Shown here piece after piece: positions 6,262 through 58,822 of a stretch of 64,000 nucleotides of DNA. The notes below the pieces were generated by a model. The model was not told the DNA's origin and made no database searches. It saw only the letters and a list, made by a program, of their open reading frames with translations. The position numbers were made by a program, and so were the translations under genes. The stretch spans positions 160,748 through 224,747 of IMG/VR virus record IMGVR_UViG_3300015261_000002. One strand, given 5' to 3'. Numbering within the stretch: the stretch's first letter is position 1; the number at the start of each line of letters is the position of its first letter.

Positions 6262-6337
6262 GGTAAAAGTACCTGTTAAAAAGGATATGTAGCAAAACCT
6301 ATAGCATTCCTCAAAAAACCATATAGCAGCCATAAGA

Positions 6338-6367
6338 CTACTAAGGGGGATTGCTCCCCCTTAGTAG
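6338..6367 (-). terminator. Perfect 13-bp hairpin followed by TTATGGCTGCT
   Basis: ctactaaggggga-ttgc-tcccccttagtag downstream of the 422-aa head gene. Confidence 0.7.
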
Positions 6368-6402
6368 CTACCTTACGGTGGTACAGCAACCGCTACGTCG
6401 AC

Positions 6403-7671
6403 TTAGAAGCCGATGTGAGCAGCAACGCAGTCCAGCGTAGCGCCAGCGGCGTTGACGGCCACTTTGGTCACGTTGGTGGCCATGCTCGAAGTCGAGCTGT
6501 AAACAGCCTTGACCAGGTTGACCTGACCGTTGACTTCAGCCGACTTGTCGGCGTCGCCAGCTTTGATCGAGTTCAGGGAACCGATCACGCGATCACGCTC
6601 AGCAGCGCTGAAAGCCTTGGCCACTTTGGTGTTGCGCAGGAACGCGCCGACGCCACGGACTTCGGAGATCGCTTTCAGCAGGCCAGCCTTGTCGGTTTTG
6701 GCCTTGACTTCGCCGGTGGTCAGCTTCTTGGCTTCCGGATCCTTCATCACAACCATTTTCAGGGAGCGAGCAGCGGCAGCGGCTTCGGCCATGGTTTTGA
6801 TTTCGGCATCGCTGTACGAAACCTGGATGCGGATACCGTTCATCACGCCGATCAGGACGTCATGGGAACCAGCCTTCTTCTCGTTGTACTTGCCGGCCGC
6901 CTTGGCGTCGGTTTTGACAGCGGAGATCAGACCGGTGTAAGCCGACTTGAAGTCTTCCAGGCTGATGCCGGAAACGTTTTTGCCCAGCTCGGTCAGCTTG
7001 GCGATCGCGCCTTGGGTGGCTTCGAAGCCTGCGGATTTCACAGTGCCCAGGCCGCCTTTGGCGTAGTCGACGTAGATGTTCCAGCCGCCCAGCTTGACCA
7101 TCTCTTTCAGCTTGGCGCCGTCTTCCAGGCGCTTCTTCAGGGTGTCGCAACGGCGCTCGAGGCCGGCGGCCTTGTCGAAGATCGACACGAAGAAACCGAT
7201 GACGGTGTTGAAGATGTGCTTGATGAACTCGACGGCTTTCTTGCCGTACTCCTTGATGGAGTCCATGATGCTTTCCATGCCCTCGCGAGCATGCATCTGA
7301 GCGGTCGACGCGTCGGTGATGGATTCAGCACCCATGCGCTCGCCCTGGATGTTGGCACCCAGTTTGTTGCCGAGTTTCACGCCACGGTTGTAGAGGTGGG
7401 CGAAAGCCAGGCCGCTGAAGTTGCCGGAGTTGATCAGGGATTCCATGCCTTCGACGACTTCGGTCGCTTCTTCGACGGCTTCTTCCAGATCGTCCATCTT
7501 GTCGACCAGCGCTTCAACTTGCTGCGACTGCTCTTCGATGGCCACGGTGACTTCGGCGATTTCGGTTTTCACCGCTTCTTCGACGGCTTCAACGACTGCT
7601 TCACCACCGGCGCCTTGCAGCTCCAGTTCTTCAGCGCCAGTGTACATGTTCAGAAGATCAATACCGGACAT
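6403..7671 (-). CDS. Major internal head protein (phiKZ gp93/95/97-like family)
   Basis: Glu-rich propeptide with several G-X-E sites (TGAE, EGME, MGAE), an amphipathic helix after EGMES, and very strong codon bias suggesting high expression. Confidence 0.7.
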   Translation of the reverse strand: MSGIDLLNMYTGAEELELQGAGGEAVVEAVEEAVKTEIAEVTVAIEEQSQQVEALVDKMDDLEEAVEEATEVVEGMESLINSGNFSGLAFAHLYNRGVKLGNKLGANIQGERMGAESITDASTAQMHAREGMESIMDSIKEYGKKAVEFIKHIFNTVIGFFVSIFDKAAGLERRCDTLKKRLEDGAKLKEMVKLGGWNIYVDYAKGGLGTVKSAGFEATQGAIAKLTELGKNVSGISLEDFKSAYTGLISAVKTDAKAAGKYNEKKAGSHDVLIGVMNGIRIQVSYSDAEIKTMAEAAAAARSLKMVVMKDPEAKKLTTGEVKAKTDKAGLLKAISEVRGVGAFLRNTKVAKAFSAAERDRVIGSLNSIKAGDADKSAEVNGQVNLVKAVYSSTSSMATNVTKVAVNAAGATLDCVAAHIGF

Positions 7672-7725
7672 AGCTATGTATCCTTTTTCGTTAACGAAGG
7701 AAAATTGTGTGTTTAATTAAACGGT

Positions 7726-8739
7726 TTACGCGAAAACACCAAGCACACCATGAATGTACCTGTCGGTGTAGCTGACCACCCGAGGAGTGAATCCGCTATA
7801 GAATGCCAACGCATTCGCCTCACCAGAGAGAATCTTCTCACCCTCTGCCATGGCACTTGAACTAACCTTGTCCAACTTACTCAGGTTAGCGTCAACGGTT
7901 TTCACCATATCCGACCAGCTCTTGATAAAGGCCAAGTAGCTGTCGTACGACGACTTCAAGCGTTTGTGCATAGAGTTGATCTTGTCCAGCTTGTTCAACA
8001 GCGCGTTGACTTCAGACTTGGATAAGGTCGTGGAGGACCCCGCCTCAGCAGGTGCGTCACCACCTATAACATATTTCGGGTGTTTGCCGTCGCCGTAGAC
8101 GCATTCCCAGACTTTGCCACCTGGCAGAGTGTCAGAGAACGTCGTGTCGCCTTTTGAATGCGGCAACTTGAACGGAGGATACTTCAACGCCTCGAACTCC
8201 TCCACAATCGCGAAGATGTTCTCAGAGGTTGAAGCACCCTTGAGCTTACGGACGACAATCAGCTGCTTGTCCAGGTAACTCAGAATTTCTTTGCTGTGCT
8301 TATCCAGTGCATCCAACGTGCTCAGCAGAGTGTCCATATCATGCCCAATATGGCCAACATCGCCATTCGAGGTGATAAGGGCAATCGTGGTCTTGCTGAG
8401 GTTCAGCTCGTGATCTTCGATCTTGCTGAAGCTTTGCGTCAGCTTTTTGATCAAGGTATCGTTGTCGCTGAAAGCACGGTACAAGCCAGCTCCTGCCGCG
8501 CCAAGGGCTTTGCCAAACAGGTCGACAGTCTTACCGCCTACCCACTTGCTGACTTCAAAGAGGCCAGCGCCAAGTTCTTTGGCGTTCTCCATAAAGTCTT
8601 CATTGCCTTCGACCCGGATCTTCATCCGGTGAGGTTCCGCGAGCAACAGGTTACCTGCTTTGTGCAGATCGTTCTGTTCCTCACGGGTCTCCAGATGGTT
8701 CTCCAGGCAGGTTTGATATAACCGATGGGTGTTGCTCAT
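7726..8739 (-). CDS. Putative internal head protein
   Basis: RVEGNE-DFME site after a short propeptide; lies in the head operon. Confidence 0.5.
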   Translation of the reverse strand: MSNTHRLYQTCLENHLETREEQNDLHKAGNLLLAEPHRMKIRVEGNEDFMENAKELGAGLFEVSKWVGGKTVDLFGKALGAAGAGLYRAFSDNDTLIKKLTQSFSKIEDHELNLSKTTIALITSNGDVGHIGHDMDTLLSTLDALDKHSKEILSYLDKQLIVVRKLKGASTSENIFAIVEEFEALKYPPFKLPHSKGDTTFSDTLPGGKVWECVYGDGKHPKYVIGGDAPAEAGSSTTLSKSEVNALLNKLDKINSMHKRLKSSYDSYLAFIKSWSDMVKTVDANLSKLDKVSSSAMAEGEKILSGEANALAFYSGFTPRVVSYTDRYIHGVLGVFA

Positions 8740-8750
8740 GTCCAGCCTCC

Positions 8751-13650: not shown

Positions 13651-16581
13651 ATGGCCGACATTACACAACGAGAACTGATCGCACTGGCCAACAACCCTAT
13701 TCGTGGGGTCAACCGTGTGATCAACCAGATCGAAGAGAACTACTTCGGTCGATCGGTAAAACTGAACAGCAAGAGCCACCCGTTTGTCTTTGGTACCGAC
13801 ATCATCCTCGGAACCGCCCACGGTATCTTGAACCGTGTTGACGATGCGGTGGCTAAACTGTTCCCCGCTCATGCACGCAGTACTGCTGATCTCAGCCGGC
13901 ACATGTCGGAAGAAGAGCAGGTCGGGATGTTTGGTACCCCGGCGATCATGGACCTGCAATACGCGATCAACACCGACGTCTACATGTCGTTGGCAAAAGA
14001 CGTAACGATCACCCTCGGCAAAAGTACCTTCACGTACAAAATGCTGTTGCTGCCGAAGGACACCGAACTGACCTTTGGTGGTTACACCTTTGCGATCGAG
14101 AACGGTATTGAAATCCGTTACAGCGAGCAGACGGGCTACCAGGTCGTCTACGATGACAGCACGAACAATCCGCTGAACCCGATCTCGAACAACCTCCTGA
14201 AGCGAGTGGTGACCCCTAACGGTTACCTGACGATCGTTATCCCGTGCCGTCAGTTGATGTGCCAGCCTACCGAGAATCTGACGTCGAACATCAGCTCGGG
14301 TTGTGCCGGTGATATCGACTTCATTGACTATCTGTTTGCCGTTCGTGCATTCCAGACGGTCAATGGCATCAAGACGGAAATCCCGGTTACCTACAACCAG
14401 GATGTCTTCGACCCTAACACGGTCACCATGGCATTGAGCCTGGATGTCAGCAACCAGCGGTTCAATTACCGTATCCCGGATGTCTACATTGCCAACGGCC
14501 TGGGCATCGGTTCGATCGACATCTATACCTACACGACGAAGGGTGAACTGTCGAAAGACTTTACCCAGACTGCGTTGCCGGATGTTGGGGTTAACTACCA
14601 GGACTATCGTTTTGGTGCAGGTACCCTCGGTCCGTTCTCTAACGCACTGAAGTCGTCAGGCGGTATGGCATGGCGGGCAATGACGCCGACGTCGGGTGGT
14701 AGCAATGCCATTCCTTTTGCTCAGATGAAGGCTTCCTTTATCATGGGTCGTCGTCAGCGCAATCTGCCGATCACCGAAAACAACCTGGTGGGTACCGTGG
14801 AGAACTACGGCTACAACTCGGTTAAGGCGATCGACTACATGACGAAGCGTAGCTACTCGTTGACCAAGGAACTTCGGATCCAGGACAACAAGAAGCTGTT
14901 TGCTCCCATGGGTTGCTTTGTTGGCAGTTACCTGGCATCGGTTAACAGTCTCATTGGTAGCGGTGTGGTGATCGACAATGGTCAGCGTATTACCATCCCG
15001 CACAACGTGCTGTTTGATATCAGCCAGCCAACTACGGTCCTGATCAACCAGGTCACGAAGAACAACTACGAAGCCAGAAGCAACGAAGCCAAGGTAGACC
15101 TGGTAGCGTCGACGACTCTCGTCTATACACCGTTCTACTACGTTATGGACCTGACGAACAACCAGGCTGTGTTGCGTACCTACCACCTCGACCAACCTAA
15201 GTTCCAAAGCCAGACGTTTAAGGCTGAGAACAGCTTGCTGGGTATCGACGTGGGTGTGGGCTCTGTGGCCATCGAGCAGAATGACTCGGGTTACCTGATC
15301 ACGATTGTGACGGCATCGGGTAAGAGCTATAAGGAACTGGACGACTCCACGTTGGGCCTCCAGCTCTCTGTACAGCCTGAAGACACAAACAGCCTGGCCA
15401 GTATTGCAGCCACCCTGTACGGCCTCACAGAAGACGGTGAACGTATCTGGCAGTTCGCACTCGACAGTCGTTTCGATGTTGATGTGAATGACGTGATGTA
15501 CTTCACAAACTTCGTGCAGTTCGGTAACACCCAACCGACCACCGGCGTTCCACTGGATCTGACGATGACGTTTATCTTCACCTTCCAAGGCGATAAGGCT
15601 AACACAGCGACCGACTCGGATGACAAGATTGACCAAAGTCTGTTCCCAGTGCCGATGGTGGCTATCATCGAAACTCAGTACAGTGTTGTGTTGGGCAAGA
15701 AGATGGGTAACCTGTACAGCCGTATCCGTCCTCTCGTAGGCGAAGCGCAGTACAAGAAGTATGGCGTCGACGTTCCGCTTGTGTATCAGGAAACGATCTA
15801 CAAGCGTGACGAGAATAAAGAGATCATCTTTATCGATGGTGTTGCTCAAGTTGAGCACGAAGTGGGTGAGGTCATGTACGACAAGAACGTACCGCCTCGC
15901 ATCATGCTGGAATACACCAAAGACGACTACATGCTTGATGGTGAAGGCAACTACATCGAAGTGGCTCCTCGTGAGAAACTCTATCACTGGGACTTCATCG
16001 GTTTCGACGGTGCGTACTTCTTCAGTCATGATGCCTATGACATGCAGTTTGCCCAAGAGACCAAGGACTACTTCGTTGATGTCATCAGTCAGGACATGGC
16101 TTACTTTGCATCGTCCTCGCTTGATCAGACTAGCCTGGTCTACCAACCGCGCAACAAGCTGGGCTACCAGAAGGTGGTCGTCAACAGCAACTACACCTCG
16201 TACCTCCGTCAGGATCTGAGCTTTGTGGTCACCTACTACCTCACGTCAGCGGGTATGAAGAACCAGAGCCTGAAGAGTTCCCTGGAAGCCAGTACTCCAC
16301 GGACACTCAACGAAGGGTTGTTTGGAGCGACAACCTTCAGTGCCAACGACTTGGCGTTCCAATTGAAGGACGGTACCTCCCGAGAAGTGGTTGCGGTTAA
16401 ACTGAGTGCCATCGCAGGTGACAGTACTGTGGATGTCATCAGTAACGCTGACTCCCTGACGGGCTTCAGTGTTCGTAAACTGTTGCAGGTGAGTTCGGAC
16501 GGCTTGCTGTCGATCAAGGAAGACATCGACATCGTGTTCTTGCCGCATGACGTTTCCATGGTCAACATGGGTCCGGTGTAA
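13651..16581 (+). CDS. Large virion protein, putative baseplate wedge (T4 gp6/baseplate-J-like)
   Basis: 976 aa and beta-rich. TSGGSNAIPFAQMK resembles the GG-x-D/N-x-E motif of baseplate J/gp6 proteins (weak inference). Confidence 0.5.
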   Translation: MADITQRELIALANNPIRGVNRVINQIEENYFGRSVKLNSKSHPFVFGTDIILGTAHGILNRVDDAVAKLFPAHARSTADLSRHMSEEEQVGMFGTPAIMDLQYAINTDVYMSLAKDVTITLGKSTFTYKMLLLPKDTELTFGGYTFAIENGIEIRYSEQTGYQVVYDDSTNNPLNPISNNLLKRVVTPNGYLTIVIPCRQLMCQPTENLTSNISSGCAGDIDFIDYLFAVRAFQTVNGIKTEIPVTYNQDVFDPNTVTMALSLDVSNQRFNYRIPDVYIANGLGIGSIDIYTYTTKGELSKDFTQTALPDVGVNYQDYRFGAGTLGPFSNALKSSGGMAWRAMTPTSGGSNAIPFAQMKASFIMGRRQRNLPITENNLVGTVENYGYNSVKAIDYMTKRSYSLTKELRIQDNKKLFAPMGCFVGSYLASVNSLIGSGVVIDNGQRITIPHNVLFDISQPTTVLINQVTKNNYEARSNEAKVDLVASTTLVYTPFYYVMDLTNNQAVLRTYHLDQPKFQSQTFKAENSLLGIDVGVGSVAIEQNDSGYLITIVTASGKSYKELDDSTLGLQLSVQPEDTNSLASIAATLYGLTEDGERIWQFALDSRFDVDVNDVMYFTNFVQFGNTQPTTGVPLDLTMTFIFTFQGDKANTATDSDDKIDQSLFPVPMVAIIETQYSVVLGKKMGNLYSRIRPLVGEAQYKKYGVDVPLVYQETIYKRDENKEIIFIDGVAQVEHEVGEVMYDKNVPPRIMLEYTKDDYMLDGEGNYIEVAPREKLYHWDFIGFDGAYFFSHDAYDMQFAQETKDYFVDVISQDMAYFASSSLDQTSLVYQPRNKLGYQKVVVNSNYTSYLRQDLSFVVTYYLTSAGMKNQSLKSSLEASTPRTLNEGLFGATTFSANDLAFQLKDGTSREVVAVKLSAIAGDSTVDVISNADSLTGFSVRKLLQVSSDGLLSIKEDIDIVFLPHDVSMVNMGPV

Positions 16582-16598
16582 AGCAGCTATAAACCATG

Positions 16599-16632
16599 CC
16601 TACCCTACCTCCCGCAAAGGAGGTAGGGTAGG
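16599..16632. terminator. Bidirectional 14-bp hairpin between convergent genes
   Basis: cctaccctacctcc-cgcaaa-ggaggtagggtagg, flanked by TTATAGCTGCT on the minus strand and TTATGGC on the plus strand. Confidence 0.75.
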
Positions 16633-16648
16633 TTATGGCCGGTACAAC

Positions 16649-17407
16649 TTATTCCGCAGGCTGTTCCATCGGAGTCCCTGGGTACTTCAGGTTCAGGTAT
16701 TCCGCAAACATGAACGGCAGCTTCAACTTGTTGCACATGTCGCTCGTGCGCCAAGAGAAGTCCTTCAGACTGTAACCCGTCAACTTCAGGTCAGGCTTGA
16801 AGGTACCTTCCAGATAGCTGGAGTGCGCCTTAGCCATGATGTCCTTGAACTCGTTAACAAAGAGGTAGTCCCCGTTGATGACGATATCCGGAACACGGTT
16901 GAGTTGATCCCACGAGGTGAGCGAACCGTCTTTCAACTTCTGCTCAGCTTCGTAGAAGTAGTCGCCGGTGTACGCGGTGTATTTCAACACCTCGCAACGG
17001 AACTCGTTCAGACGTTCCTGGCTCTCCACCGTGAAGTCAGCTGCGAGCAGCTCTTTCATTGTGGTGTTGACGACCTGGTCGATGTAGGCGTAAATGACCT
17101 CGAAGTACTCGCGGGTTTCTTTCAGCTCGCCCAGTTGCTTGCGTGCTTCTTCAACGGGCAGGCCTGCATACAGCACAACAGACTTGTTCGTTTCAGGAAA
17201 GCATTCGGACAACTGAACAATCAGCGAGTTAGCCCGAGAGCTACTACCCCAGATACCGCGGATGATCTTTGTAGCGACCGGCAGTGGAAGACCTTCGTCT
17301 TCCATCGCGGTGATCAGGGATTCGAGTTCGTCGATGTACGTCTGAGTCGTGACATCAGCCACACCCTTCAGTTTGACGATCTCTTCCCACATGGCTGCTC
17401 GGCTCAT
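16649..17407 (-). CDS. Hypothetical protein (252 aa)
   Basis: ATGA-coupled to the upstream gene. Confidence 0.55.
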   Translation of the reverse strand: MSRAAMWEEIVKLKGVADVTTQTYIDELESLITAMEDEGLPLPVATKIIRGIWGSSSRANSLIVQLSECFPETNKSVVLYAGLPVEEARKQLGELKETREYFEVIYAYIDQVVNTTMKELLAADFTVESQERLNEFRCEVLKYTAYTGDYFYEAEQKLKDGSLTSWDQLNRVPDIVINGDYLFVNEFKDIMAKAHSSYLEGTFKPDLKLTGYSLKDFSWRTSDMCNKLKLPFMFAEYLNLKYPGTPMEQPAE

Positions 17408-20737: not shown

Positions 20738-20820
20738 GCACCTGTACTCCTCAAAGATATTTATTACTGGGACGCCATTGGTATAGCGCTAAAAGCGGGC
20801 ATAAAATGCAGGATAAACCC

Positions 20821-22680
20821 ATGACACAAAATCTTTCACCAATTATCGCGAAAGTCTGCAAACATGCTCATTATTCAGAGCATCGCTGGGACAAAACCAA
20901 AGACCTCCTCACAGCGAAGATCACGAACATCCATGAGGACGGTACTCGGTCGACAACCTTTAAGTCCTACGAGAATTACAAGCAGCCGTTCTGGATCATT
21001 AAGGAACAGCATCGCAAGTTCAACCAACCAAAGGACTACATCGAAGAACGGTACGTCAGGGAATACCGTTGCAATCGTCGTCAGATTCCATTTGAAGTCA
21101 AGAAGCAGTTGTTTGGGGCAGCTGATCGCAGTGCTTCGATTTATGACATCAAGTCGGGCAAAGGTATTCAATACGTGTTTGGTCTTGACCAGACGCCTGC
21201 GGTGCATTTGAAGCAACAGTTCTTTAAACGGTATGCGGAATACCAGGAAAAAGAAAAGTACACCATTGCGGCATTCGACGTTGAAGCCGACATGGAAGCG
21301 ATTGGTGAAGTGAAACCGATCATGATGGCTTCGGTCACTATGAAGGACAAAGCTTACTTCGCCGGGTGCCGGGGTTGGTATCAGTCTCGGCAGGACAAGA
21401 TTGACCCGAAGGTTCGTTTAACTGACTTTGCGATTTTAGCGGAGTTAAAAGCGGCCGAGAAGAAGTACCTGCAAGAACACTTGGATCGTCGAGGTTGCAC
21501 GATTGAGTATGAGTTGTTCGATACACCGGGTCAGGTAGCCTTTGCTTGTATTCAGAAGTTCCACGAGTGGGAACCAGACTGGGTACTGAGCTGGAACGCC
21601 GCTTACGATATGGAAGCGTGTGAGCGTGCATTGCGGTCCGAGGGTTATAACCTGGCCGACGTGTATTGCGATCCTCGTGTTCCAAAAGAGTATCGGATGT
21701 ATGAACTTAACCTGGGTCGTACACACAAGGTTAAAGAGAACGGCGACCGTACTCCTCTCGAACCTCAAGAGAAGTTCCCAACCGTTCGTTGTGTAGCAAC
21801 ATGGCAGTGGGCTGATGCCATGTCGGGTTATGCCATCAAGCGATTCTCTTCGGGTAAGCTCGAGAGTTACTCGCTGGAGGCGACTGCGCAACGGGAGAAG
21901 GTCAAGGGTAAGCTGTACACCGAAGAAGGCGCTGATAAGCTCCCAGGGTCTCCTCAGTGGCATCGATACATGCAGAAGCATTATCCGTATCTGTATTCGA
22001 TGTACAACATTGGCGATAACTTCCCAATCGAAGAGATCAACGAAACCACGCTGGACTTTGTACTGTCGATTCCAATGCTGCTGCGTTATTCGGAGTATTT
22101 CAACTTCGTTTCGCAACCACGTTTGATTGCAGATACCTTGTCCTTTATTGCGCGTGAGCATGGTTACGTTTGGGGCAGCACTCCTGCTAAACGGGATAAA
22201 GTCTTTACTGACCGACTGCCGACTCTCGACAACTGGATTGCACTTCTCGATACTGAGAAGAACGCAGACATGGGTCGGGCAATCTTTATCGGTCTGGATG
22301 ACGTTATCAGTGCGGGTCGTGGTCTTACTGACGACCTTGACGTTGAAGGGGCGTACCCAACCGGTACACTGGCTTCTAACGCAGCGAACAAAACCACGCA
22401 GATGGAGGTGTATGCCATTCAGGGTGCTAATGACATGAAGTTCCGGGAGATTGCCGTGAACTATGCCAGCAGTACTCAAGCGAATGCCATGGGTCTGAGT
22501 CACGCACTGTTCCGTTTCCCACAAGCCGACAAACTGCAATCTGAGTTTGAGAAAGGTTTGGAAGAACTGGGTTATGCAGACATGTTGAAGCAACTGCGTG
22601 AAAGTGCAGAGAAAGCAAAAGCAGAACGAGAAGCACGTCAAGCCAAAGTCCTACCAGAAGTACTGAAAGAAGCGGCGTAA
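20821..22680 (+). CDS. Split family-B DNA polymerase, N-terminal part (3-prime exonuclease plus motif A; phiKZ gp82-like)
   Basis: ExoI AAFDVEAD, ExoII SWNAAYDM, ExoIII YNIGD and polymerase motif A DLDVEGAYP. Confidence 0.8.
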   Translation: MTQNLSPIIAKVCKHAHYSEHRWDKTKDLLTAKITNIHEDGTRSTTFKSYENYKQPFWIIKEQHRKFNQPKDYIEERYVREYRCNRRQIPFEVKKQLFGAADRSASIYDIKSGKGIQYVFGLDQTPAVHLKQQFFKRYAEYQEKEKYTIAAFDVEADMEAIGEVKPIMMASVTMKDKAYFAGCRGWYQSRQDKIDPKVRLTDFAILAELKAAEKKYLQEHLDRRGCTIEYELFDTPGQVAFACIQKFHEWEPDWVLSWNAAYDMEACERALRSEGYNLADVYCDPRVPKEYRMYELNLGRTHKVKENGDRTPLEPQEKFPTVRCVATWQWADAMSGYAIKRFSSGKLESYSLEATAQREKVKGKLYTEEGADKLPGSPQWHRYMQKHYPYLYSMYNIGDNFPIEEINETTLDFVLSIPMLLRYSEYFNFVSQPRLIADTLSFIAREHGYVWGSTPAKRDKVFTDRLPTLDNWIALLDTEKNADMGRAIFIGLDDVISAGRGLTDDLDVEGAYPTGTLASNAANKTTQMEVYAIQGANDMKFREIAVNYASSTQANAMGLSHALFRFPQADKLQSEFEKGLEELGYADMLKQLRESAEKAKAEREARQAKVLPEVLKEAA

Positions 22681-22687
22681 AGCAGCT

Positions 22688-22731
22688 ATAAACCCTCCTA
22701 CTCCCTTTGTCGGGGAGTAGGAGGGTTTATT
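22688..22731. terminator. Bidirectional 19-bp hairpin
   Basis: ataaaccctcctactcccc-tttgtc-ggggagtaggagggtttat between convergent genes. Confidence 0.8.
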
Positions 22732-38001: not shown

Positions 38002-38047
38002 AATGTTTTCTCCTATTATCTTAAACTTGGTACTGCCTATCTCAAAG

Positions 38048-38068
38048 ATGATATAGGTTTAAGTTTTA
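38048..38068 (-). promoter_or_regulatory. Candidate phage promoter (weaker match to the repeated motif)
   Basis: TAAAACTTAAACCTATATCAT, 47 nt upstream of the nvRNAP beta gene. Confidence 0.4.
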
Positions 38069-38138
38069 TTAGGGTTGCCATATCGCTTATAGCAATAAAG
38101 GATGGGGCGGCCAGTTAACAATTAGCTTGGAGAGGACA

Positions 38139-38468
38139 ATGCCAATTCCAAACTCTGAATCAGACAACGGTAAAGACATCTATTACACCGAAGGTTTCAA
38201 GACCTTGGTGCGGTCTCAGAAAGAAATCTTGTTGCGCGGTTCTCAGCTGATGCCCATTGTGGACCGGGCCATGTTGTACGCATTCCGCACTGACTTCTAT
38301 CGCGTACTGCGTGTCATGAAGATTCCCGCTCACTTACGTTGGGCTACCGCATACATCAACGACGTCCTTGACCCCAATCAGGATGTGTCTGATATGCAAT
38401 CGTTTCAGATGATCAACGAGAGCGATTTGAACAAAGCCATATCCCGCAGTGATACTGTCAAAGGCTAA
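38139..38468 (+). CDS. Small protein, possibly baseplate wedge gp53/LysM-like
   Basis: GGAGAGG RBS. LRWATAYINDVLDP resembles the W-x5-N-x3-DP pattern of gp53/P2-X type proteins (weak). Confidence 0.4.
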   Translation: MPIPNSESDNGKDIYYTEGFKTLVRSQKEILLRGSQLMPIVDRAMLYAFRTDFYRVLRVMKIPAHLRWATAYINDVLDPNQDVSDMQSFQMINESDLNKAISRSDTVKG

Positions 38469-38480: not shown

Positions 38481-38510
38481 TAGCAGGTTGGGGATATCCC
38501 CAACCTGCTA
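38481..38510. terminator. Perfect 13-bp hairpin followed on the plus strand by TTATGGCTGCT
   Basis: tagcaggttgggg-atat-ccccaacctgcta. Confidence 0.75.
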
Positions 38511-38523
38511 GCCTTATGGCTGC

Positions 38524-43003: not shown

Positions 43004-43040
43004 CTCTTTAACTCCAAACAGTAATAGCGTCTACAGAGGG

Positions 43041-43068
43041 ATAATGTAGGTTTTAAATCTTTTTACCC
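43041..43068 (-). promoter_or_regulatory. Candidate early (vRNAP) promoter
   Basis: GGGTAAAAAGATTTAAAACCTACATTAT, near-identical to the element upstream of phuZ. Confidence 0.6.
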
Positions 43069-43113
43069 ATACGGAAATTGCTCAAAAAACAATTAGCAGC
43101 CATAGGGTTAGGC

Positions 43114-43138
43114 AGAGCAGAGGATTACCCTCCGCTCT
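43114..43138 (-). terminator. Imperfect hairpin followed by CTATGGCTGCT
   Basis: agagc-a-gagg-attac-cctc-c-gctct downstream of the ChmC-like gene. Confidence 0.5.
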
Positions 43139-43872: not shown

Positions 43873-43970
43873 AGCAGATTCCTTTTTGTTCAAGCAGGGG
43901 AAATTGGTGATTTGAGTCTATATGAATGGTGACTCTGTGACATTAAAGCCGTATTACTTGGCGACATATC

Positions 43971-47900: not shown

Positions 47901-49538
47901 TTAGGCTACATCAAGGATCGGCGTTTGCGCCATGAGCGTGTTAAGGTTCATGAGGTTAGTTGCCGCTTGCCCTGCGTAGTCACCCACTGTAAACGGAATG
48001 TTGCGGTCCAACGTCTGATGGTGACCCCACGCGCCGTAAGCTTTCGCTTTGGACTCGTTATCGGCCATAAGGACGATGTAGTGGTTGTCGCCGTCAAAGT
48101 CGGTGTTCGATTCACTTACGGCCAGGATCGGTACGCGAATACTTTCATCCTGGAGATCGCGGTTCACACGGAGGAACGCACTGCGCAGACTGAGGAACTC
48201 AATCGACGGGTTACGTCCGCTCTGTATGATAGCCTTGTTGTTTTCTTCCATGTCGCGGAAGAATTCATCAATCAGCGGGTCGATCCAATACGCAGCTCGA
48301 CTGATTCGCTGGATGGCCTGATACGGAGTATGACCGCGACGGTACAAGAAGCCCGTGATGTGATAGTCCAGAATAGCCAGACACATCTTCCACGGGACCA
48401 TCCACTCATCCGGGTTGAGGATACCGGTTACCGAGGTTACAACCGAGCGGCCAGTGAACGGTACTGCACCAGAGGCCACGTGTTTACGGTTGAGTGCAGG
48501 CTTACCAAACAACGCTTTCGGGTTGTTTACCTTACGGTATTGGTCAGCCAGCTTAACCAGGTTCTTGCCGACGATCTCGCAGTTACGACGCTTATCGGCG
48601 GCGCTCAGCTTAACGACAGCATTCGAACGTTTGGTATCAGCAATCGCGGTGTACAGCTGTGCAGTGACCGGTTGGTGAGGATAGGCGTAAGTATCCTTGC
48701 CCGTCTTCTCCAGGATCGTTGCGTAGCGATTCGGCACCTTCATGTACTTGGAGAACGCGATGTGCTTGTTCTTTTGGTACACTTCCATCAACACCACACC
48801 TTCGTGCGAGGTCGTGCAATGGCGTTTGCCATTACCTACCAGCATCCAGTGCATGATGTCATCACACCGTGCCTGGAAGGTGTTCATGTTTACGTCGATG
48901 ATCTCCAGCTCTTCGAGCATGTTGCGAATCAGGTTGACGGTGGTGTTCTTTTGCTTGTTGATCTGGCCGCGATACGTCGGGTCGATGAAGTACCGTGGTA
49001 CGCAGACCTTTGGACTGCCAATGCCGACTTTGTTAAAGAAGGTCGAGAAGAAACCCAAGTTAACAAACCCATTCACACCCTCTGGCAACTTAAGCCACAG
49101 CCGAGTGTCCTCTCCGCGGTCCAGGAACAGCTCTGGAACCTCTCCGCACTTAGGACAAGCCTTACCCTGCTTCAGCCGGTAGTTGCCACGGTAGTGACCA
49201 CAGGCCGGATTACAGGTAGCGACTGTCTCGAACGAGTTACCTGTGAATTCCATACGAGTCAGACGCTCGATGGCTTCGCGATCTTCCTGAATGTTGAAGT
49301 CAAACTCATTCAGGTAAATAGGCTTCAGACGACTGGTATCGTGCAAGTAGTCGTAGTCTTCGAAGTCCCAGTACAGAGGCTCCGAGTAACGGGGGTCATC
49401 CTCCAGCGACCGGCCGAAGGCTGCGGCGTAACGGTTGAAGAAAGGCATTGGATCAAGCTTTTCTTCGTTGTACTGTGTGAGCTTTTTGATTGCCAGCTCA
49501 TTTGACGGAGTGAGTTCCGGTAAGTACATATTGCCCAT
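47901..49538 (-). CDS. Non-virion RNA polymerase beta-prime N-terminal catalytic subunit (phiKZ gp55-56.1-like), uninterrupted
   Basis: Catalytic NTDFDGD (NADFDGD-type), zinc finger CNPAC...CPKC, RKHVASG...GRSVV, GRNPS. Confidence 0.9.
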   Translation of the reverse strand: MGNMYLPELTPSNELAIKKLTQYNEEKLDPMPFFNRYAAAFGRSLEDDPRYSEPLYWDFEDYDYLHDTSRLKPIYLNEFDFNIQEDREAIERLTRMEFTGNSFETVATCNPACGHYRGNYRLKQGKACPKCGEVPELFLDRGEDTRLWLKLPEGVNGFVNLGFFSTFFNKVGIGSPKVCVPRYFIDPTYRGQINKQKNTTVNLIRNMLEELEIIDVNMNTFQARCDDIMHWMLVGNGKRHCTTSHEGVVLMEVYQKNKHIAFSKYMKVPNRYATILEKTGKDTYAYPHQPVTAQLYTAIADTKRSNAVVKLSAADKRRNCEIVGKNLVKLADQYRKVNNPKALFGKPALNRKHVASGAVPFTGRSVVTSVTGILNPDEWMVPWKMCLAILDYHITGFLYRRGHTPYQAIQRISRAAYWIDPLIDEFFRDMEENNKAIIQSGRNPSIEFLSLRSAFLRVNRDLQDESIRVPILAVSESNTDFDGDNHYIVLMADNESKAKAYGAWGHHQTLDRNIPFTVGDYAGQAATNLMNLNTLMAQTPILDVA

Positions 49539-49581
49539 GGCCGACTCCAAAAACAGAAAAACAGAAAAAAGAGATCAGCGA

Positions 49582-49641: not shown

Positions 49642-51663
49642 TTACATGAACGGCATGTTCATGTTGTACGCCAGGCCCAGGCCGTTGCCGTTGGCATTGT
49701 TCGAGCCAGCACCCACGAGGGTAGCCAGACCGATGCCAGGCGTCGAAGCCAGGCTGGTGTTGCGCCAGCTGCCCAGGTTGTTCGCGACGTTCAGCTGACC
49801 GATGGTGTCCATGGCTTTCGACATGGCAGCCATGAAGTCAGGCGCCCAGATGTGAGGCTGAGCCCAGCCGTTGATGTGAACCTGACCGTCGAACAGCGAC
49901 GAACCGGTTTCCACGCGCAGCTTCTGAGCACGTTGCTTGAACTCTTCGCCCTGGATGGTACCGTACATGGTCGACAGCAGGCTTTCGGCTGCGAGTTGAC
50001 CTTTCGGGCCCTTGATGTGCGAGATCATCATCTCGTCCAGTTCCTGGGTGTTGAACTTGCGACCGGCGTATTCGGCCAGGCCGTTTACCGCGATCATGCC
50101 AGTCGGGATCAGCACTGGCTTGGAAGGCGTCCAACCTTGTTGCGAGGTGACGTTCTGGCGGATGATTTCCGAGAACGCGCCCTTGGTCATGCTGTCGATG
50201 AGCGAGATCACCACCTTGATTTCTGCCGCGTTCTGGCCTTGCTTGGCCAGCTGGAAGAAGAAGTTGTTGATCGAAGCGTTCGGACCGGCCGGGATCAGGT
50301 TGATCTGGAAGGTTGCATGCGGGGAAACGTTCTGACGGATCCAGTTGTTGACCAGCTCGGTGTCCGACATCTTCTTCTCGTCGAGACGGATACGTTGCGG
50401 GTTCTGGAAGCCACCAGGGATCTGGCTTACCATTTGGTCAACACGGACTTCCAGGTCGGCCAGGTTACCGCGAGCACCCACGCTGTGACGGCGCAGAGCT
50501 TCGGACCAGACGTACTGGTTGTTCGTCGCCATCAGCGCGTACAGGCCGGTGAAGAACGGGAACAGACCGCCGTTGTTGCAGAGTTGCTCGCCGGCTTGAA
50601 CGGTGCCGACGGTGATCACTGGACGCAGAGGTTTGAAGCCCTGTGGGTAAACACCCATGCCCATTTGGTTGCCCAGGAACTGTTGCAGCGCGTTCATCTG
50701 CTCTTGCGAGCGGTGCGACATCATGAAACGCTGGTGATCTTCCCACGACACGCCGTTCAGGCTGACAGCGGCGGTAGCACGGATGATCTCTTTCGAGTTG
50801 GCCTGGAAGTTGCCGGTGTTCTGGTTGTTGTTGTTGATCGTCGAAACGATCACTTCCATGTTGTCGGCGGTCAGGGTGCCGGCCTTGCTGGTGCGGAAGC
50901 TGATAGCGCTCACACGAGCTTCGGCGCAGCCGTCTTTGCCGTACGGTTGATCAGGAGTTGCGAACGGTGCCGGAACCTGATAGCCCTTGGCAACGATTTC
51001 GCGAACGGTTTTGACCATGATCGCTTCTTCCCACTCGGAGGCGATGTAGTTCGCCTGACGGTGAGCGTAGTCTTTCGGATCGCCGGCTTCCTGATGGTTC
51101 AGGAGTTCCAGGTCGACCACGATCATGTTGATGACGCTGACGTTCTTCACGCCTTGTGCTTCGGCGACCTTGGTGTAGTGACCGGTCAGCTTTTCCAGGA
51201 ACTGGCTGTTCGGGTACTGGGCCGGGGTCAGCGGCGCCGACATTTGCTGCATGATGTTGTTGGCGTTGACGGTGATGCGCTCGACGCCGATGCTCAGGGT
51301 GCGGTTGTAGAACAGCGCGGCCATCACGTACATGGTGCCGTCGAAGATGACGTACAGACCGACGCCCGGCAGTTGAGCCGAGATGGACGGGGTCAGGCTT
51401 TCGACGGTCGGAACGATTTTGCGTTGCAGTTCGTTGGTGGTGGACTTCTTGGCGTTCTCGTAGATCGCCTCGAGTTTCTCGATGGTTTCAGCAACCTCTT
51501 TCAGGTTGCGGTTATCCGACGTCATGGACGGCAGACGAAGCAGGCCGGCGAGACCATCCAGCGGAGCCATGGTGCCCGGAGCGCCTGGAGCCTGGCTTGC
51601 GTTGGTAGGCTTTTCGTTGTCGTTCCAGGAGGTGCTTTCGGAAGAACCGGTGTTCAGTGTCAT
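49642..51663 (-). CDS. chmA: Chimallin, major phage nuclear shell protein (~673 aa)
   Basis: Start MTLNTG after AAGGA. Size, extreme codon bias, position immediately upstream of nvRNAP beta-prime N, disordered N-terminus and aromatic/hydrophobic C-terminal tail. Confidence 0.85.
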   Translation of the reverse strand: MTLNTGSSESTSWNDNEKPTNASQAPGAPGTMAPLDGLAGLLRLPSMTSDNRNLKEVAETIEKLEAIYENAKKSTTNELQRKIVPTVESLTPSISAQLPGVGLYVIFDGTMYVMAALFYNRTLSIGVERITVNANNIMQQMSAPLTPAQYPNSQFLEKLTGHYTKVAEAQGVKNVSVINMIVVDLELLNHQEAGDPKDYAHRQANYIASEWEEAIMVKTVREIVAKGYQVPAPFATPDQPYGKDGCAEARVSAISFRTSKAGTLTADNMEVIVSTINNNNQNTGNFQANSKEIIRATAAVSLNGVSWEDHQRFMMSHRSQEQMNALQQFLGNQMGMGVYPQGFKPLRPVITVGTVQAGEQLCNNGGLFPFFTGLYALMATNNQYVWSEALRRHSVGARGNLADLEVRVDQMVSQIPGGFQNPQRIRLDEKKMSDTELVNNWIRQNVSPHATFQINLIPAGPNASINNFFFQLAKQGQNAAEIKVVISLIDSMTKGAFSEIIRQNVTSQQGWTPSKPVLIPTGMIAVNGLAEYAGRKFNTQELDEMMISHIKGPKGQLAAESLLSTMYGTIQGEEFKQRAQKLRVETGSSLFDGQVHINGWAQPHIWAPDFMAAMSKAMDTIGQLNVANNLGSWRNTSLASTPGIGLATLVGAGSNNANGNGLGLAYNMNMPFM

Positions 51664-51748
51664 GAGTGTTTTCCTTTTATACGAAGATAGTCTGCTATAG
51701 CGACGTTGTTTTAACAAATGTGGAACATTTGTACTACCAACTACATGA

Positions 51749-51776
51749 GTAATATAGTCTTGAAAATTTCTTACCC
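51749..51776 (-). promoter_or_regulatory. Early promoter of chimallin
   Basis: GGGTAAGAAATTTTCAAGACTATATTAC contains TATATTAC, the reported phiKZ early-promoter core. Confidence 0.65.
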
Positions 51777-51969
51777 CAGCAGAAACCATCCCGCTTTTCA
51801 GCAGGGATGATATAGAGTAGTCGCTTTCAAAGCTGTATTACAAATTCTCAAATTGCGCAATGGTCCCCAGTAGGAGATCTTCTCCTGATGTGACTTGTTC
51901 ACATAAGATAGAGAATTCCAGTGAGACTTTATTTTAAACATCCCTCCCCATTTTTCTCGGACAGCCATT

Positions 51970-53199: not shown

Positions 53200-53212
53200 G
53201 GTCGAATTCACG

Positions 53213-53955: not shown

Positions 53956-53962
53956 GTTCACC

Positions 53963-56151: not shown

Positions 56152-56160
56152 AGTTTACCC

Positions 56161-56905: not shown

Positions 56906-56915
56906 GATGTTCTCT

Positions 56916-57227: not shown

Positions 57228-57546
57228 CGTCAACTTCCAGTAAAATGATGTGAGGGTGGACTGCGTAACGTTGCAGGTAACCGGTTGCAGCCACCCGCCG
57301 GAATTGCATGCCTACGTCAACAAGTATCTCTAAAGCGTCCAGGATAAGGATCTGGGCATGCAGCGGGTCCAGATCCATTTCGGTGCGAATGAACTCAGCC
57401 ACCACTCCTGGAATATACGGTTCTTCGTTAAACCTGCACACGCCCATCAGCAGTGCGATCAGGTTACAGGTCTCATTGGGATGAAACCCACGGCTACCAA
57501 AGGCCGTCGGAATGCAGCCCAGGGCCAAGCCATACGTCTTGCTCAT
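57178..57546 (-). CDS. Small hypothetical protein
   Basis: Start MSKTYG after GGAG. Confidence 0.45.
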   Translation of the reverse strand: MSKTYGLALGCIPTAFGSRGFHPNETCNLIALLMGVCRFNEEPYIPGVVAEFIRTEMDLDPLHAQILILDALEILVDVGMQFRRVAATGYLQRYAVHPHIILLEVDDEYQNHYTHRNDPPEH

Positions 57547-57991
57547 CGCCGCACTCCTGCTCGTCAAAGGTATCAGTTGCTAGAGGCTCGTAATCCCTGA
57601 CGTCCATGTAAACCAACAAATCACCGTTTGCGAGGATCTGGTATACAAAAGGATGATCCGGTGACGTTTTATTGGTGATGTTGCCCATCTGGTGCGTGAT
57701 GTGGGACATGATCTTGTCGAGCTCGAGTTCCAGATCGTCCGCATACAGGTAGCGGCGTGCAGCCTTCTGATTGTAGCGACAGTCGTTAAGGTTCTTGCCC
57801 TTGAGGAACATGAGTTGCTCAATGCCCATCTCAAGCACACCCCAAGCCATCTCTTTAGAAAGATGGGGAACGTAATCATTGCTGAGGGAAGATATCTCGC
57901 TCAAAAGGTTCTCTAACAGCTGTCGGTTGTCGATCTGAAAGCTGCGGAGTTCGCCGAATACTCCGACGCTCAACAGTTTCAAGGAATTCAT
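57494..57991 (-). CDS. Small acidic hypothetical protein
   Basis: Start MNSLK after GGAGG. Confidence 0.45.
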   Translation of the reverse strand: MNSLKLLSVGVFGELRSFQIDNRQLLENLLSEISSLSNDYVPHLSKEMAWGVLEMGIEQLMFLKGKNLNDCRYNQKAARRYLYADDLELELDKIMSHITHQMGNITNKTSPDHPFVYQILANGDLLVYMDVRDYEPLATDTFDEQECGDEQDVWLGPGLHSDGLW

Positions 57992-58427
57992 TGATCGCCT
58001 CCGGACTTGGGTTTTCACTGATGGTGTCGCCAGTGACCTTGGAACGCACAGTGCGTGTAACCTTAGGTTTGGCATTTGCTCTCAACGTAGCATCCAAGTC
58101 CATTTCGATGTGAGCTTGGTGAAACCCGTGTGAGATCTTCTTGAAATCGACCTTCACCTTCAATCGTGGATCCCACGAACGACGGCGCATTTCCTTTTGT
58201 AGCTTTTGCTTGAGCTCAACCATCACAAGGTCAGGCGTCAGCATGTCGTAATGTTCTTCGTATACATTCCCCAGGTGATCCAAAAGCTCTTCTTCACGCC
58301 GTGGATGATTGATCATCTCTACTACGGCTTCCAGCATTCGCACAGCAATTGATTCCCGCACTCCAGGAGAATCGTCCTTATCCATTACCAAACTGTTGCC
58401 CAAGTTTAGTACATCGAATCTGATCAC
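57876..58427 (-). CDS. Hypothetical protein (183 aa)
   Basis: GTG start after AAAGGGG. Confidence 0.5.
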   Translation of the reverse strand: MIRFDVLNLGNSLVMDKDDSPGVRESIAVRMLEAVVEMINHPRREEELLDHLGNVYEEHYDMLTPDLVMVELKQKLQKEMRRRSWDPRLKVKVDFKKISHGFHQAHIEMDLDATLRANAKPKVTRTVRSKVTGDTISENPSPEAINEFLETVERRSIRRTPQLSDRQPTAVREPFERDIFPQQ

Positions 58428-58438
58428 TGCTTGCCCCT

Positions 58439-58801
58439 TTAGTATTTCAGTGTAACCAGAACTTGTTGCCGGAGCTTACCGAAAGTCTGCATTTTAACCA
58501 CAGCGTCCCTAGGTACCCCCAACAGCTTGCTAGCCACCTGATCCCTTAACGCGTTGATATCATTTCCCCAGATCCGGTGATAGGGCCTGGGGGTCTCGAA
58601 TGAATTGAATCCCTCGTCGACGAGTATGGCATGCAGATCAATCGTGGATATAGCACGATTTAAGCAACGTTTATCTGCACCCACTGGTACGTCCAGGGTA
58701 TAGGATTTTAAATCCAGAGAGAAGCTCTTAGACACCTTCCTGACCCCTATATAAAAACCATGCCTCATAGTAATGAAGACGGCTGTGTAAAAAGATATCA
58801 A
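58439..58801 (-). CDS. Hypothetical protein (start uncertain; alternative ATG at 58768)
   Basis: First ORF after the phuZ terminator. Confidence 0.4.
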   Translation of the reverse strand: MISFYTAVFITMRHGFYIGVRKVSKSFSLDLKSYTLDVPVGADKRCLNRAISTIDLHAILVDEGFNSFETPRPYHRIWGNDINALRDQVASKLLGVPRDAVVKMQTFGKLRQQVLVTLKY

Positions 58802-58822
58802 AAAACAACATAGCAGCTATAA

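What the first reader, a model, noticed from the sequence alone, without database searches (positions are those of the whole stretch)
6325..58822. Recurrent 11-mer TTATRGCTGCT immediately 3-prime of terminator hairpins
Seen: exact matches at 6325-6335 (-), 16582-16592 (-), 22681-22691 (-), 38514-38524 (+) and 58812-58822 (-), and a one-mismatch copy at 43095-43105 (-). Each lies within about 8 nt of a GC-rich hairpin, where a U-tract would normally be. A rough equal-composition estimate gives under 0.1 chance hits in the whole window. Three copies face antisense to the neighbouring gene, so it is not simply a promoter. Hairpins without the motif tend to have normal T-tracts. Inference: a sequence-specific termination or pause signal for a phage RNAP (analogous to T7 class II terminators), or an RNA processing or protein-binding site.
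Basis: partly seen in the sequence, partly recalled or inferred. Interest (0 to 1): 0.65.

Follow-up and report, generated by a model that had tools for sequence, protein, structure and literature searches.

The report
Jumbo-phage terminator hairpin tail motif
A conserved 11-base tail (TTATRGCTGCT) follows the terminator hairpins of an uncultured phiKZ-like jumbo phage; it is a clade-specific, longer version of the 'hairpin + TTAT' terminator signature already mapped in phage phiKZ, so it is real but not a new kind of element.

Summary
The window has 5 exact copies and 1 one-mismatch copy. Shuffles give 0.08 exact copies. The whole 224.7-kb genome, a rhizosphere metagenome phage with chimallin, PhuZ and split RNA polymerase genes, has 11 exact copies. 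All 11 lie 0-6 nt after a strong hairpin. A same-strand gene always ends 40-75 nt upstream.

Five related metagenomic phages (87-90% aa identity) keep the motif at the same sites. There the stems change by compensatory substitutions or are replaced outright, and the loops vary freely.

The motif occurs only on hairpin sides that face the end of a gene (10/42 against 0/22). Most other gene-facing hairpin sides carry T-tracts.

Published ONT-cappable-seq 3'-end maps of phiKZ describe the same architecture: a stem-loop followed by TTAT (…YTTATKYYGT). I found TTAT(G) enriched after hairpins in phiKZ, EL and RisingSun too. The RGCTGCT extension is absent from all three.

Best reading: this is the single-stranded 3' tail of phiKZ-type intrinsic terminators, replacing a long U-tract, in a lineage-specific form. 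A promoter role is unlikely. RNA processing is not excluded. No RNA data exist for this phage, and specificity for a phage polymerase is untested.

The parts
6325..6335 (-). Motif copy TTATGGCTGCT, tandem context, downstream of the internal-head-protein gene 6403-7671(-)
6338..6367 (-). Terminator hairpin: 13-bp perfect stem, GCAA loop
6313..6318 (-). T6 run 6 nt after the motif's 3' end. It is seen only at the tandem copies and its role is unknown (distal U-tract or part of the next promoter region).
16582..16592 (-). Motif copy TTATAGCTGCT. It lies downstream of gene 16649-17407(-) and abuts the TAA stop (16579-16581) of the convergent gene 13651-16581(+).
16599..16632 (.). Bidirectional terminator hairpin: 14-bp perfect stem, extended by CCAT/ATGG pairing
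16633..16643 (+). Degenerate second copy TTATGGCCGGT on the other side of the same hairpin, serving the (+) gene 13651-16581
22681..22691 (-). Motif copy TTATAGCTGCT. It lies downstream of gene 22766-23845(-) and abuts the TAA stop of the convergent DNA-polymerase-like gene 20806-22680(+).
22688..22730 (.). Hairpin with an 18-bp perfect stem whose base includes the motif's TTAT paired with ATAA
38514..38524 (+). Motif copy TTATGGCTGCT downstream of the small gene 38127-38468(+) (phrog_3455). Its last T is the first base of the reverse-strand TAA stop of gene 38524-39969(-).
38481..38510 (.). Bidirectional hairpin with a 13-bp stem. The other side carries a T-rich tail (TACCTTTCTTTTTT on the - strand).
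43095..43105 (-). One-mismatch copy CTATGGCTGCT, tandem context, downstream of gene 43156-43893(-)
43114..43138 (-). Weaker hairpin (10-bp stem) 8 nt upstream of the motif
43084..43089 (-). T6 run after the tandem copy
43040..43050 (-). Separate promoter-like box CCTACATTATC between the terminator and the next gene start (43003). It shows that the motif is not needed as that gene's promoter.
58812..58822 (-). Motif copy TTATAGCTGCT, tandem context, downstream of the PhuZ tubulin gene 58868-59866(-)
58823..58854 (-). Terminator hairpin. The predicted fold extends into the first 6 nt of the motif.
58800..58805 (-). T6 run after the tandem copy

Best explanation
TTATRGCTGCT (wider consensus YTATRGCYGCW) is the conserved single-stranded 3' tail of factor-independent, hairpin-type transcription terminators in this phiKZ-like (Chimalliviridae-type) jumbo phage.

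Proposed mechanism: the polymerase transcribes a long, very stable hairpin (13-18 bp). Directly behind it comes UUAU, a short weak RNA:DNA hybrid segment that stands in for the proximal U-tract. The next bases (RGCUGCU) act as a sequence-specific slowing or release signal, so that the transcript ends within or just after the motif.

The element is favoured where a long U-tract cannot be fitted. Between convergent genes the motif fills exactly the space between the hairpin and the opposing gene's stop codon.

It is the lineage-specific form of the 'stem-loop + TTAT(KYYGT)' terminator consensus mapped at RNA 3' ends in phiKZ.

Shown here: position, orientation, conservation and family-wide TTAT enrichment. 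Inferred: that transcripts end there in this phage, and how the tail acts on the polymerase.
For: 1. Non-randomness and hairpin linkage. There are 11 exact copies in 224.7 kb, and all lie directly 3' of a strong hairpin. Only 0.3% of random positions have such a fold upstream.

2. Orientation. A same-strand gene ends 40-75 nt upstream of every copy. The motif occurs on 10 of 42 hairpin sides that face a gene end and on 0 of 22 that do not.

3. Complementarity with T-tracts. In tandem and other non-convergent contexts 12 of 19 gene-facing sides carry T-tracts and 3 carry the motif. In convergent contexts 7 of 23 carry the motif, often with a T-rich tail on the other side of the same hairpin.

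4. Footprint. At seven convergent sites the opposing stop codon lies at -2 to +2 nt from the motif's end and never deeper.

5. Selection. Five related genomes each carry 3-11 exact copies and 0 copies of the reversed control pattern. At orthologous sites 57 of 60 sequences keep YTATRGYYG. Stems differ through paired changes, with up to five distinct perfect 17-bp stems at one site. Some stems are replaced outright and loops vary freely. Positions 9-11, which the anchoring pattern did not constrain, are C 51/57, T 51/57 and W 57/57.

6. Published precedent. In phiKZ, 61 terminators at mapped 3' ends share ...GGGRRGGBYTTATKYYGT (PMC10914365). Motif A of 201phi2-1 resembles it (PMC11512511).

7. 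My own scan. TTAT lies near the 3' base of GC-rich hairpins on 33% of sides here, 26% in EL, 33% in RisingSun and 64% in phiKZ. Backgrounds are 2.5-11%.
Against: There is no transcript data for this phage. It is known only from DNA metagenomes, so no 3' end has been seen.

The published phiKZ 3' ends cannot fully separate termination from processing.

The RGCTGCT extension is absent from phiKZ, EL and RisingSun, so its role cannot be borrowed from them.

The TAT(G) core equals the phiKZ late-promoter initiator (PMC4666361), which keeps a promoter-linked reading alive.

At the tandem copies a T6 run follows 6 nt after the motif's end. Termination there could depend on that run rather than on the motif.

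Covariation at any single site is modest (2 compensatory pairs among 7 sequences).
Confidence: 0.7

Rival explanations
1. The motif is a promoter or initiator for the non-virion RNA polymerase. TATR would correspond to the phiKZ late-promoter T(-3)ATG(+1), with transcription starting at the purine, placed just behind the upstream gene's terminator.
For: The phiKZ late promoter is exactly TATG, is essential, and starts at the G (PMC4666361). R at position 5 fits a purine start. The four tandem copies do point at a downstream gene.
Against: Eight of 12 copies point into the 3' end of a convergent gene or have no nearby gene to drive.

Three of the four tandem copies are followed 35-55 nt downstream by degenerate versions of the family's promoter-like box, and the fourth (43040-43050) by an exact YCTAYATYAYY copy.

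No hairpin-free copy lies upstream of any gene. Copies of the loosened pattern that lack a hairpin are inside genes or are a start codon.

The archetypal phiKZ late promoter P119L has no GC-rich hairpin upstream of TATG (PMC7618050).

Five of the 11 copies have A in place of the G, a change that in phiKZ strongly reduces transcription.
Confidence: 0.07
2. The motif acts at RNA level after transcription. It would be a cleavage site or a protein-binding site just 3' of a protective hairpin, defining or stabilising mature mRNA 3' ends rather than stopping the polymerase.
For: It has the same positional signature as a terminator: single-stranded, directly 3' of a stable hairpin, only on the transcribed side. 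It is A/U-rich at the hairpin base. The motif carries more sequence information than a U-tract substitute would seem to need.
Against: At convergent sites, reading through to a downstream cleavage site would mean transcribing antisense into the neighbouring gene. The authors of the phiKZ maps interpreted the TTAT hairpins as intrinsic terminators, predicted as such by ARNold. No candidate nuclease or binding protein has been linked to the motif.
Confidence: 0.13
3. The hairpin plus motif is a repeated palindromic DNA cassette (REP- or MITE-like, or a DNA-level protein site) that spreads or is homogenised by recombination. Its link to transcription would be incidental.
For: Hairpins share a common style (…CCCTCCTA…, GCAA-type loops). 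One relative carries, at the site-16582 orthologue, the same 32-nt hairpin + motif that another relative carries at the site-22681 orthologue. Loops flip CGCAAA<->TTTGCG, as expected of DNA palindromes.
Against: Stem sequences differ widely between sites, while only the tail is constant. Apart from one site, there is no presence/absence polymorphism among relatives. The strict orientation rule relative to gene ends (10/42 against 0/22) is not expected of a DNA-level repeat. Cassette exchange is compatible with a terminator function.
Confidence: 0.05

Closest known systems
Conserved intrinsic-terminator motif of phiKZ (5'-BCCYCCCCHWWDGGGRRGGBYTTATKYYGT-3'; Putzeys et al. 2024, PMC10914365) and motif A of 201phi2-1 (PMC11512511)
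   Same: Same phage family. Same architecture: a stable GC-rich stem-loop directly followed by TTAT and a few semi-conserved bases containing Y-Y-G. Same location after gene ends, including bidirectional use between convergent genes. TTAT enrichment after hairpins is confirmed here in phiKZ, EL, RisingSun and this genome.
   Different: The tail here is longer and much better defined (TTAT-R-G-C-T-G-C-T-W). It has an extra G relative to TTAT-K-Y-Y-G-T. The extended form is not enriched in phiKZ, EL or RisingSun. Stems are longer (13-18 bp against about 7-10 bp). No 3'-end mapping exists for this phage.
Canonical bacterial intrinsic (Rho-independent) terminators
   Same: A GC-rich hairpin is followed by a U-containing segment. 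The element sits downstream of stop codons. Many other hairpins in this genome do carry ordinary T-tracts.
   Different: Only UUAU, with 3 U in 4 positions, follows the stem. The next 7 positions are a fixed G/C-containing sequence rather than U-rich.
T7 RNA polymerase class II termination/pause signal (ATCTGTT + U-run); from general knowledge
   Same: It is a sequence-specific, non-U-tract signal read by a phage polymerase. There is a superficial CTG(Y)T resemblance.
   Different: T7 class II works without an RNA hairpin and on a single-subunit polymerase unrelated to the multisubunit enzymes of this family. The resemblance is an analogy, not membership.
[quoted passage not shown]
   Same: The TAT(G) core is identical to positions 2-5 of the motif. 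The window encodes homologues of nvRNAP subunits.
   Different: The copies here are tied to hairpins and mostly point at convergent genes. Half carry A instead of G. The archetypal late promoter P119L has no hairpin.
Bacterial elemental pause consensus G(-10)Y(-1)G(+1); from general knowledge
   Same: Y-G steps (T4|R5 and T8|G9) lie 4-11 nt after a G-rich 3' stem arm. That is roughly where a pause would help hairpin-driven release.
   Different: Purely a sequence resemblance. Pausing by these phage polymerases has not been characterised.

Membership tests
phiKZ-type conserved intrinsic terminator (stem-loop + TTAT tail) | Stable GC-rich stem-loop immediately upstream of the tail | tested here: met
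   All 11 exact copies have an upstream 50-nt fold of -23 kcal/mol or below, and the one-mismatch copy has -17.7. Perfect stems of 13-18 bp occur at 8 of 12 sites.
phiKZ-type conserved intrinsic terminator (stem-loop + TTAT tail) | 5'-TTAT-3' directly 3' of the stem | tested here: met
   TTAT starts within -5 to +6 nt of the stem end at 11 of 12 sites (CTAT at the twelfth). TTAT lies near the stem end on 39% of strong-hairpin sides in the five clade genomes, against 2.7% background.
phiKZ-type conserved intrinsic terminator (stem-loop + TTAT tail) | Tail continues K-Y-Y-G-T | tested here: inconclusive
   The tail here is R-G-C-T-G-C-T. It matches K-Y-Y-G only if one extra G is allowed after position 5. 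A few hairpins in this genome carry the exact phiKZ form TTATGCTGT. The extended form is absent from phiKZ, EL and RisingSun.
phiKZ-type conserved intrinsic terminator (stem-loop + TTAT tail) | C-rich 5' arm / G-rich 3' arm (CCYCCCC…GGGRRGG) | tested here: inconclusive
   By eye, roughly half of the motif-bearing hairpins have a …CCCTCC…GGAGGG… stem; the others are mixed or the reverse.
phiKZ-type conserved intrinsic terminator (stem-loop + TTAT tail) | Lies downstream of a same-strand gene end, including bidirectional use between convergent genes | tested here: met
   12 of 12 sites meet this. The motif is on 10 of 42 gene-facing hairpin sides against 0 of 22 others.
phiKZ-type conserved intrinsic terminator (stem-loop + TTAT tail) | Coincides with mapped RNA 3' ends | not testable with these tools
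   Only DNA metagenome runs hold this genome. No RNA run does.
phiKZ-type late promoter (TATG initiator) | Upstream of, and pointing at, a gene it drives, with no need for a hairpin | tested here: not met
   Eight of 12 copies face a convergent gene's 3' end or have no nearby target. No hairpin-free copy lies upstream of a gene. The tandem copies have separate promoter-like sequences downstream.
T7 class II terminator | Hairpin-independent signal ATCTGTT followed by a U-run, read by a single-subunit RNAP | tested here: not met
   The motif is always tied to a hairpin. The phage encodes multisubunit beta/beta'-like polymerases. No single-subunit RNAP was looked for.
Known RNA families (Rfam 15) | Match at gathering score | tested here: not met
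   0 matches in the window.

The most novel reading that the evidence does not exclude
[quoted passage not shown] One polymerase-intrinsic DNA-reading site would then serve both to start transcription and, when it follows a hairpin, to pause and release the polymerase. The clade-specific GCTGCT extension would reflect co-evolution with this clade's divergent beta-like subunit. That would be a sigma-independent, core-encoded, sequence-specific terminator signal in a multisubunit RNA polymerase.
Probability: 0.15. Interest if true: 0.75.

Novelty: new variant of a known kind. Interest (0 to 1): 0.4.

Why it matters
Transcription termination by the unusual sigma-less multisubunit polymerases of nucleus-forming jumbo phages is barely understood. 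The phiKZ 'hairpin + TTAT' consensus has been described, but its mechanism has not been explained.

This clade offers a sharper version of that signal. It has about 11 defined positions. It is kept through complete turnover of the hairpins, and it is used preferentially where a U-tract cannot fit.

That gives a clean substrate for mutational work on what the tail does. It gives a practical rule for annotating transcription units in uncultured Chimalliviridae-like genomes. It also offers compact bidirectional terminators for synthetic biology.

It is an incremental advance, not a new principle, unless the dual promoter/terminator reading proves true.

Tried and rejected
RNA evidence: the single run search found only DNA metagenome holders. 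One rhizosphere run holds 100% of the words and is probably the source. The few 'RNA?' wastewater runs hold 6% of the words. I therefore did not use read laying, because contigs cannot show RNA ends.

Megablast of 8 kb of the window against GenBank phages found nothing.

Rfam found no family in the window.

The sigma-70 promoter and classic terminator scan gave counts no higher than in shuffled sequence, and it picked up only two of the motif hairpins.

Motif paired with the 5' flank: RNAfold sometimes pairs TTAT(GG) with an upstream (CC)ATAA. This is not consistent across sites and reflects TTAT-type tails on both sides of bidirectional hairpins. I rejected it as the reason for conservation.

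Start-codon reading: the ATG inside TTATGGCTGCT opens ORF 5206-6333 at one site. At 43095 the frame stops after 16 codons. A hairpin-free copy in two relatives is a genuine start codon behind an AAGGAG ribosome-binding site. This is coincidence and does not explain the motif.

Temporal or gene-class specificity: the genes that end at motif terminators are mixed. They include an internal head protein, virion proteins, terminase, PhuZ, a ribonuclease and unknowns. No pattern emerged.

Supplementary tables with the phiKZ and 201phi2-1 3'-end coordinates are not held. The exact 3'-end position relative to TTAT could not be read.

Two of my promoter-box patterns were mistyped and gave meaningless hits. 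One search replaced them.

I did not attempt residue-level conservation of the GP123 TATG pocket. Identity to phiKZ proteins is only 22-30%, too low for a reliable residue check.

Full report
**What the window is.** The 64-kb window is the last part of a single 224,747-bp contig with 51.6% GC. It encodes a nuclear-shell (chimallin) protein at 49642-51789(-) and PhuZ tubulin at 58868-59866(-). It also encodes split beta/beta'-like RNA polymerase genes at 33731-38001(-) and 47901-49550(-), and DNA polymerase pieces. By blastp the RNAP genes match the phiKZ ORFs at the positions of the non-virion RNAP genes gp74, gp71-73 and gp55 (assignment by position, from my knowledge of the phiKZ map). The nearest named relatives are Pseudomonas phage EL (about 55% aa) and Erwinia phages RisingSun and Joad (about 50%). 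The only run that holds the sequence in full is a rhizosphere DNA metagenome. This is an uncultured phiKZ-like, nucleus-forming jumbo phage. Table 11 was used throughout, and nothing resembling human sequence was met.

**The observation.** All six coordinates are right. There are five exact copies against 0.08 expected from dinucleotide shuffles. With one mismatch there are six against 0.99, and 0 of 100 shuffles reach six. The whole genome has 11 exact copies. Every one sits 0-6 nt after a long hairpin, with perfect stems of 13-18 bp at most sites. For all 11, the 50 nt upstream fold at -23 kcal/mol or below, which is true of 0.3% of random positions. Loosened patterns (TATRGCTG, TTATRGYYG) split cleanly in two. 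Intergenic copies follow hairpins. Scattered copies inside genes have no structure and look like chance.

**Gene context.** I called genes with a simple codon-usage caller: 204 genes covering 93% of the genome. The key ones were checked against PHROGs. On the motif strand a gene always ends 40-75 nt upstream, with the hairpin in between. Seven of the twelve sites (11 exact plus the one-mismatch copy) lie between convergent genes. There the far end of the motif touches the opposing stop codon at -2 to +2 nt. At an eighth site (G000 14677) the facing gene is 436 nt away. Coding sequence butts against the element but does not enter it, which marks out an 11-nt functional footprint. Four sites are tandem. 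In the three tandem sites inside the window a T6 run follows 6 nt after the motif's end.

**Hairpin sides across the genome.** Among intergenic hairpins with stems of 9 bp or more, the motif appears on 10 of 42 sides that face a gene end and on 0 of 22 that do not. In tandem and other non-convergent contexts most gene-facing sides carry ordinary T-tracts (12 of 19). In convergent contexts the motif is the commonest single class (7 of 23). Often the other side of the same hairpin has a T-rich tail made possible by an A-rich spacer after the other gene's stop.

**Conservation.** IMG/VR holds eight related contigs, seven at 87-90% aa identity and one at 54%. The five I scanned whole, four of them 93-100% complete, carry 3-11 exact copies each and no copy of the reversed control pattern. 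All copies but one follow hairpins. The exception, seen in two genomes, is a real start codon behind AAGGAG. I fetched four complete relatives and aligned the twelve orthologous sites.

- 57 of 60 orthologous sequences keep YTATRGYYG.
- The next three positions, which my anchoring pattern did not constrain, are C 51/57, T 51/57 and W 57/57.
- Further downstream, within-site identity falls to about 0.75.
- The stems differ at one to four paired positions yet stay perfect. Site 14677 has five different 17-bp stems.
- At the site-16582 orthologue, two contigs have a different hairpin altogether in front of an unchanged motif.
- Loops vary freely and often flip between CGCAAA and TTTGCG.
- A formal pair count at one site gives 99% pairing, two compensatory pairs, and no support for slid registers. 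That is modest alone, but the pattern repeats across sites.

Both a structure and a specific sequence are under selection.

**Relation to what is known.** ONT-cappable-seq of phiKZ located 133 termination regions. [quoted passage not shown] The main terminator motif of 201phi2-1 'strongly resembles' it (PMC11512511). I fetched phiKZ, EL and RisingSun and repeated my hairpin scan. TTAT lies near the 3' base of GC-rich hairpins on 64%, 26% and 33% of sides, against backgrounds of 11%, 4% and 5%. Here the figures are 33% against 2.5%. After TTAT, phiKZ shows G/A, Y, Y, G/T, T, as published. This genome shows R, G, C, T, G, C, T with far higher information. The extended pattern TTATRGCYGY is not enriched in phiKZ, EL or RisingSun (0-2 hits, fewer than the control), and is absent from the 54%-identity contig L006. 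The finding is therefore the local, sharpened form of a family-wide terminator signature. The extension is peculiar to this uncultured clade.

**Mechanism.**

- *Shown:* position, orientation, footprint, conservation and family-wide precedent.
- *Inferred:* UUAU gives a short weak hybrid directly behind an unusually long hairpin. The fixed RGCUGCU supplies what a distal U-tract normally supplies, namely slowing of the polymerase at the right distance. The Y-G steps at T4|R5 and T8|G9 resemble the bacterial elemental pause rule; this is a resemblance recalled from general knowledge and was not tested.
- *Context preference:* the element fits into 11 nt between a hairpin and an opposing stop codon. 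That would explain why it is favoured at convergent junctions, while roomy tandem junctions use T-tracts.
- *Polymerase specificity:* whether the signal is specific for phage polymerases is open. In 201phi2-1, eight phage terminators worked in uninfected Pseudomonas chlororaphis, that is, with host RNAP.

**Rivals.**

1. *Promoter.* The TAT(G) core equals the phiKZ late-promoter initiator T(-3)ATG(+1) (PMC4666361). [quoted passage not shown] However, eight of twelve copies aim into a convergent gene or at no nearby gene. Three of the four tandem copies are followed 35-55 nt downstream by degenerate versions of a separate promoter-like box, and the fourth (43040-43050) by an exact YCTAYATYAYY copy. 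This box family lies 30-65 nt before many gene starts, and 18 of its 22 genome copies are intergenic. No hairpin-free copy precedes a gene. The archetypal P119L promoter has no hairpin (PMC7618050). I give this rival 0.07.

2. *RNA processing or protein binding just 3' of a protective hairpin.* Sequence alone cannot exclude this. I give it 0.13.

3. *A recombining palindromic DNA cassette.* There is a hint of exchange between sites: the same 32-nt hairpin + motif sits at two different loci in two relatives. The strict orientation rule argues for a transcriptional role, and cassette exchange is compatible with that role. I give it 0.05.

**Most novel reading not excluded.** The same core-subunit pocket that reads TATG at promoters may also read TATR behind hairpins during elongation and so trigger pausing and release. 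This is attractive because the recogniser is an integral core subunit. Nothing here tests it, and the structural paper says the pocket is incomplete in the transcribing complex. I put it at 0.15.

**Verdict.** It is a new variant of a known kind, of moderate interest.

Noticed in passing
window 38047-38057(-), 43040-43050(-), 51806-51816(-), 59931-59941(-), 61660-61670(-); G000 17426, 64309, 111069, 148089 for the long form: A promoter-like box YCTAYATYAYY (often preceded by AAA) lies 30-65 nt upstream of many minus-strand gene starts, and 18 of its 22 genome copies are intergenic. A longer form, TTAAGATACA-N10-GTCTATATTACT-N4-GTGATTAAGA, recurs four times. The ATTACC part recalls the phiKZ middle-promoter motif AAanTTACc. 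These are probably this phage's early and middle promoters.
   Followed up: partly
orthologues of G000 14677, 57550, 145647, 177329 (window 16599-16632) in G001-G004: Hairpin loops flip between CGCAAA and its reverse complement TTTGCG among close relatives, while stems and tail stay put. This is the kind of loop inversion expected of perfect DNA palindromes. The orientation of the GCAA (GNRA-type) loop does not track the motif strand.
   Followed up: partly
L003:12927-13005 compared with L001:19039-19113: The 32-nt hairpin + motif at the site-16582 orthologue in contig L003 is the same sequence as the hairpin + motif at the site-22681 orthologue, 6 kb away, in L001. This suggests ectopic conversion or cassette exchange between terminators.
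   Followed up: partly
window 6313-6318, 43084-43089, 58800-58805 (all -): A T6 run followed by GA lies 16-17 nt after the start of the motif at the three tandem window copies and is mostly kept in relatives. It is absent at convergent copies, where coding sequence begins. It could be a distal U-tract or part of the downstream promoter region.
   Followed up: partly
window 16633-16643(+): The other side of the 16599-16632 hairpin carries a degenerate copy, TTATGGCCGGT. This terminator therefore has motif-type tails in both directions.
   Followed up: yes
window 6279-6333(-): The longest ORF of the gene ending at 5206 starts at the ATG inside the motif (6333). This is probably not the true start, and an in-frame ATG lies at 6279. 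Automatic annotation may over-extend this gene across the terminator.
   Followed up: no
window 61755-61776 and the following ~30 nt: An AT-only palindrome (ATAAATATATAAATATATTTAT) is followed by an alternating GC-rich stretch (…GCGCACGGAGCGCGTGCGCGCACACACGC). Both lie in a 625-nt gene-free region near the contig end. Three relatives are classed as having direct terminal repeats, so this may be near a genome terminus or origin.
   Followed up: no
G000 48585(-); G001 218806(+); G002 99783(-): A few hairpins in this clade carry the exact phiKZ-type tail TTATGCTGT instead of TTATRGCTGCT. Both forms therefore coexist in one genome.
   Followed up: partly
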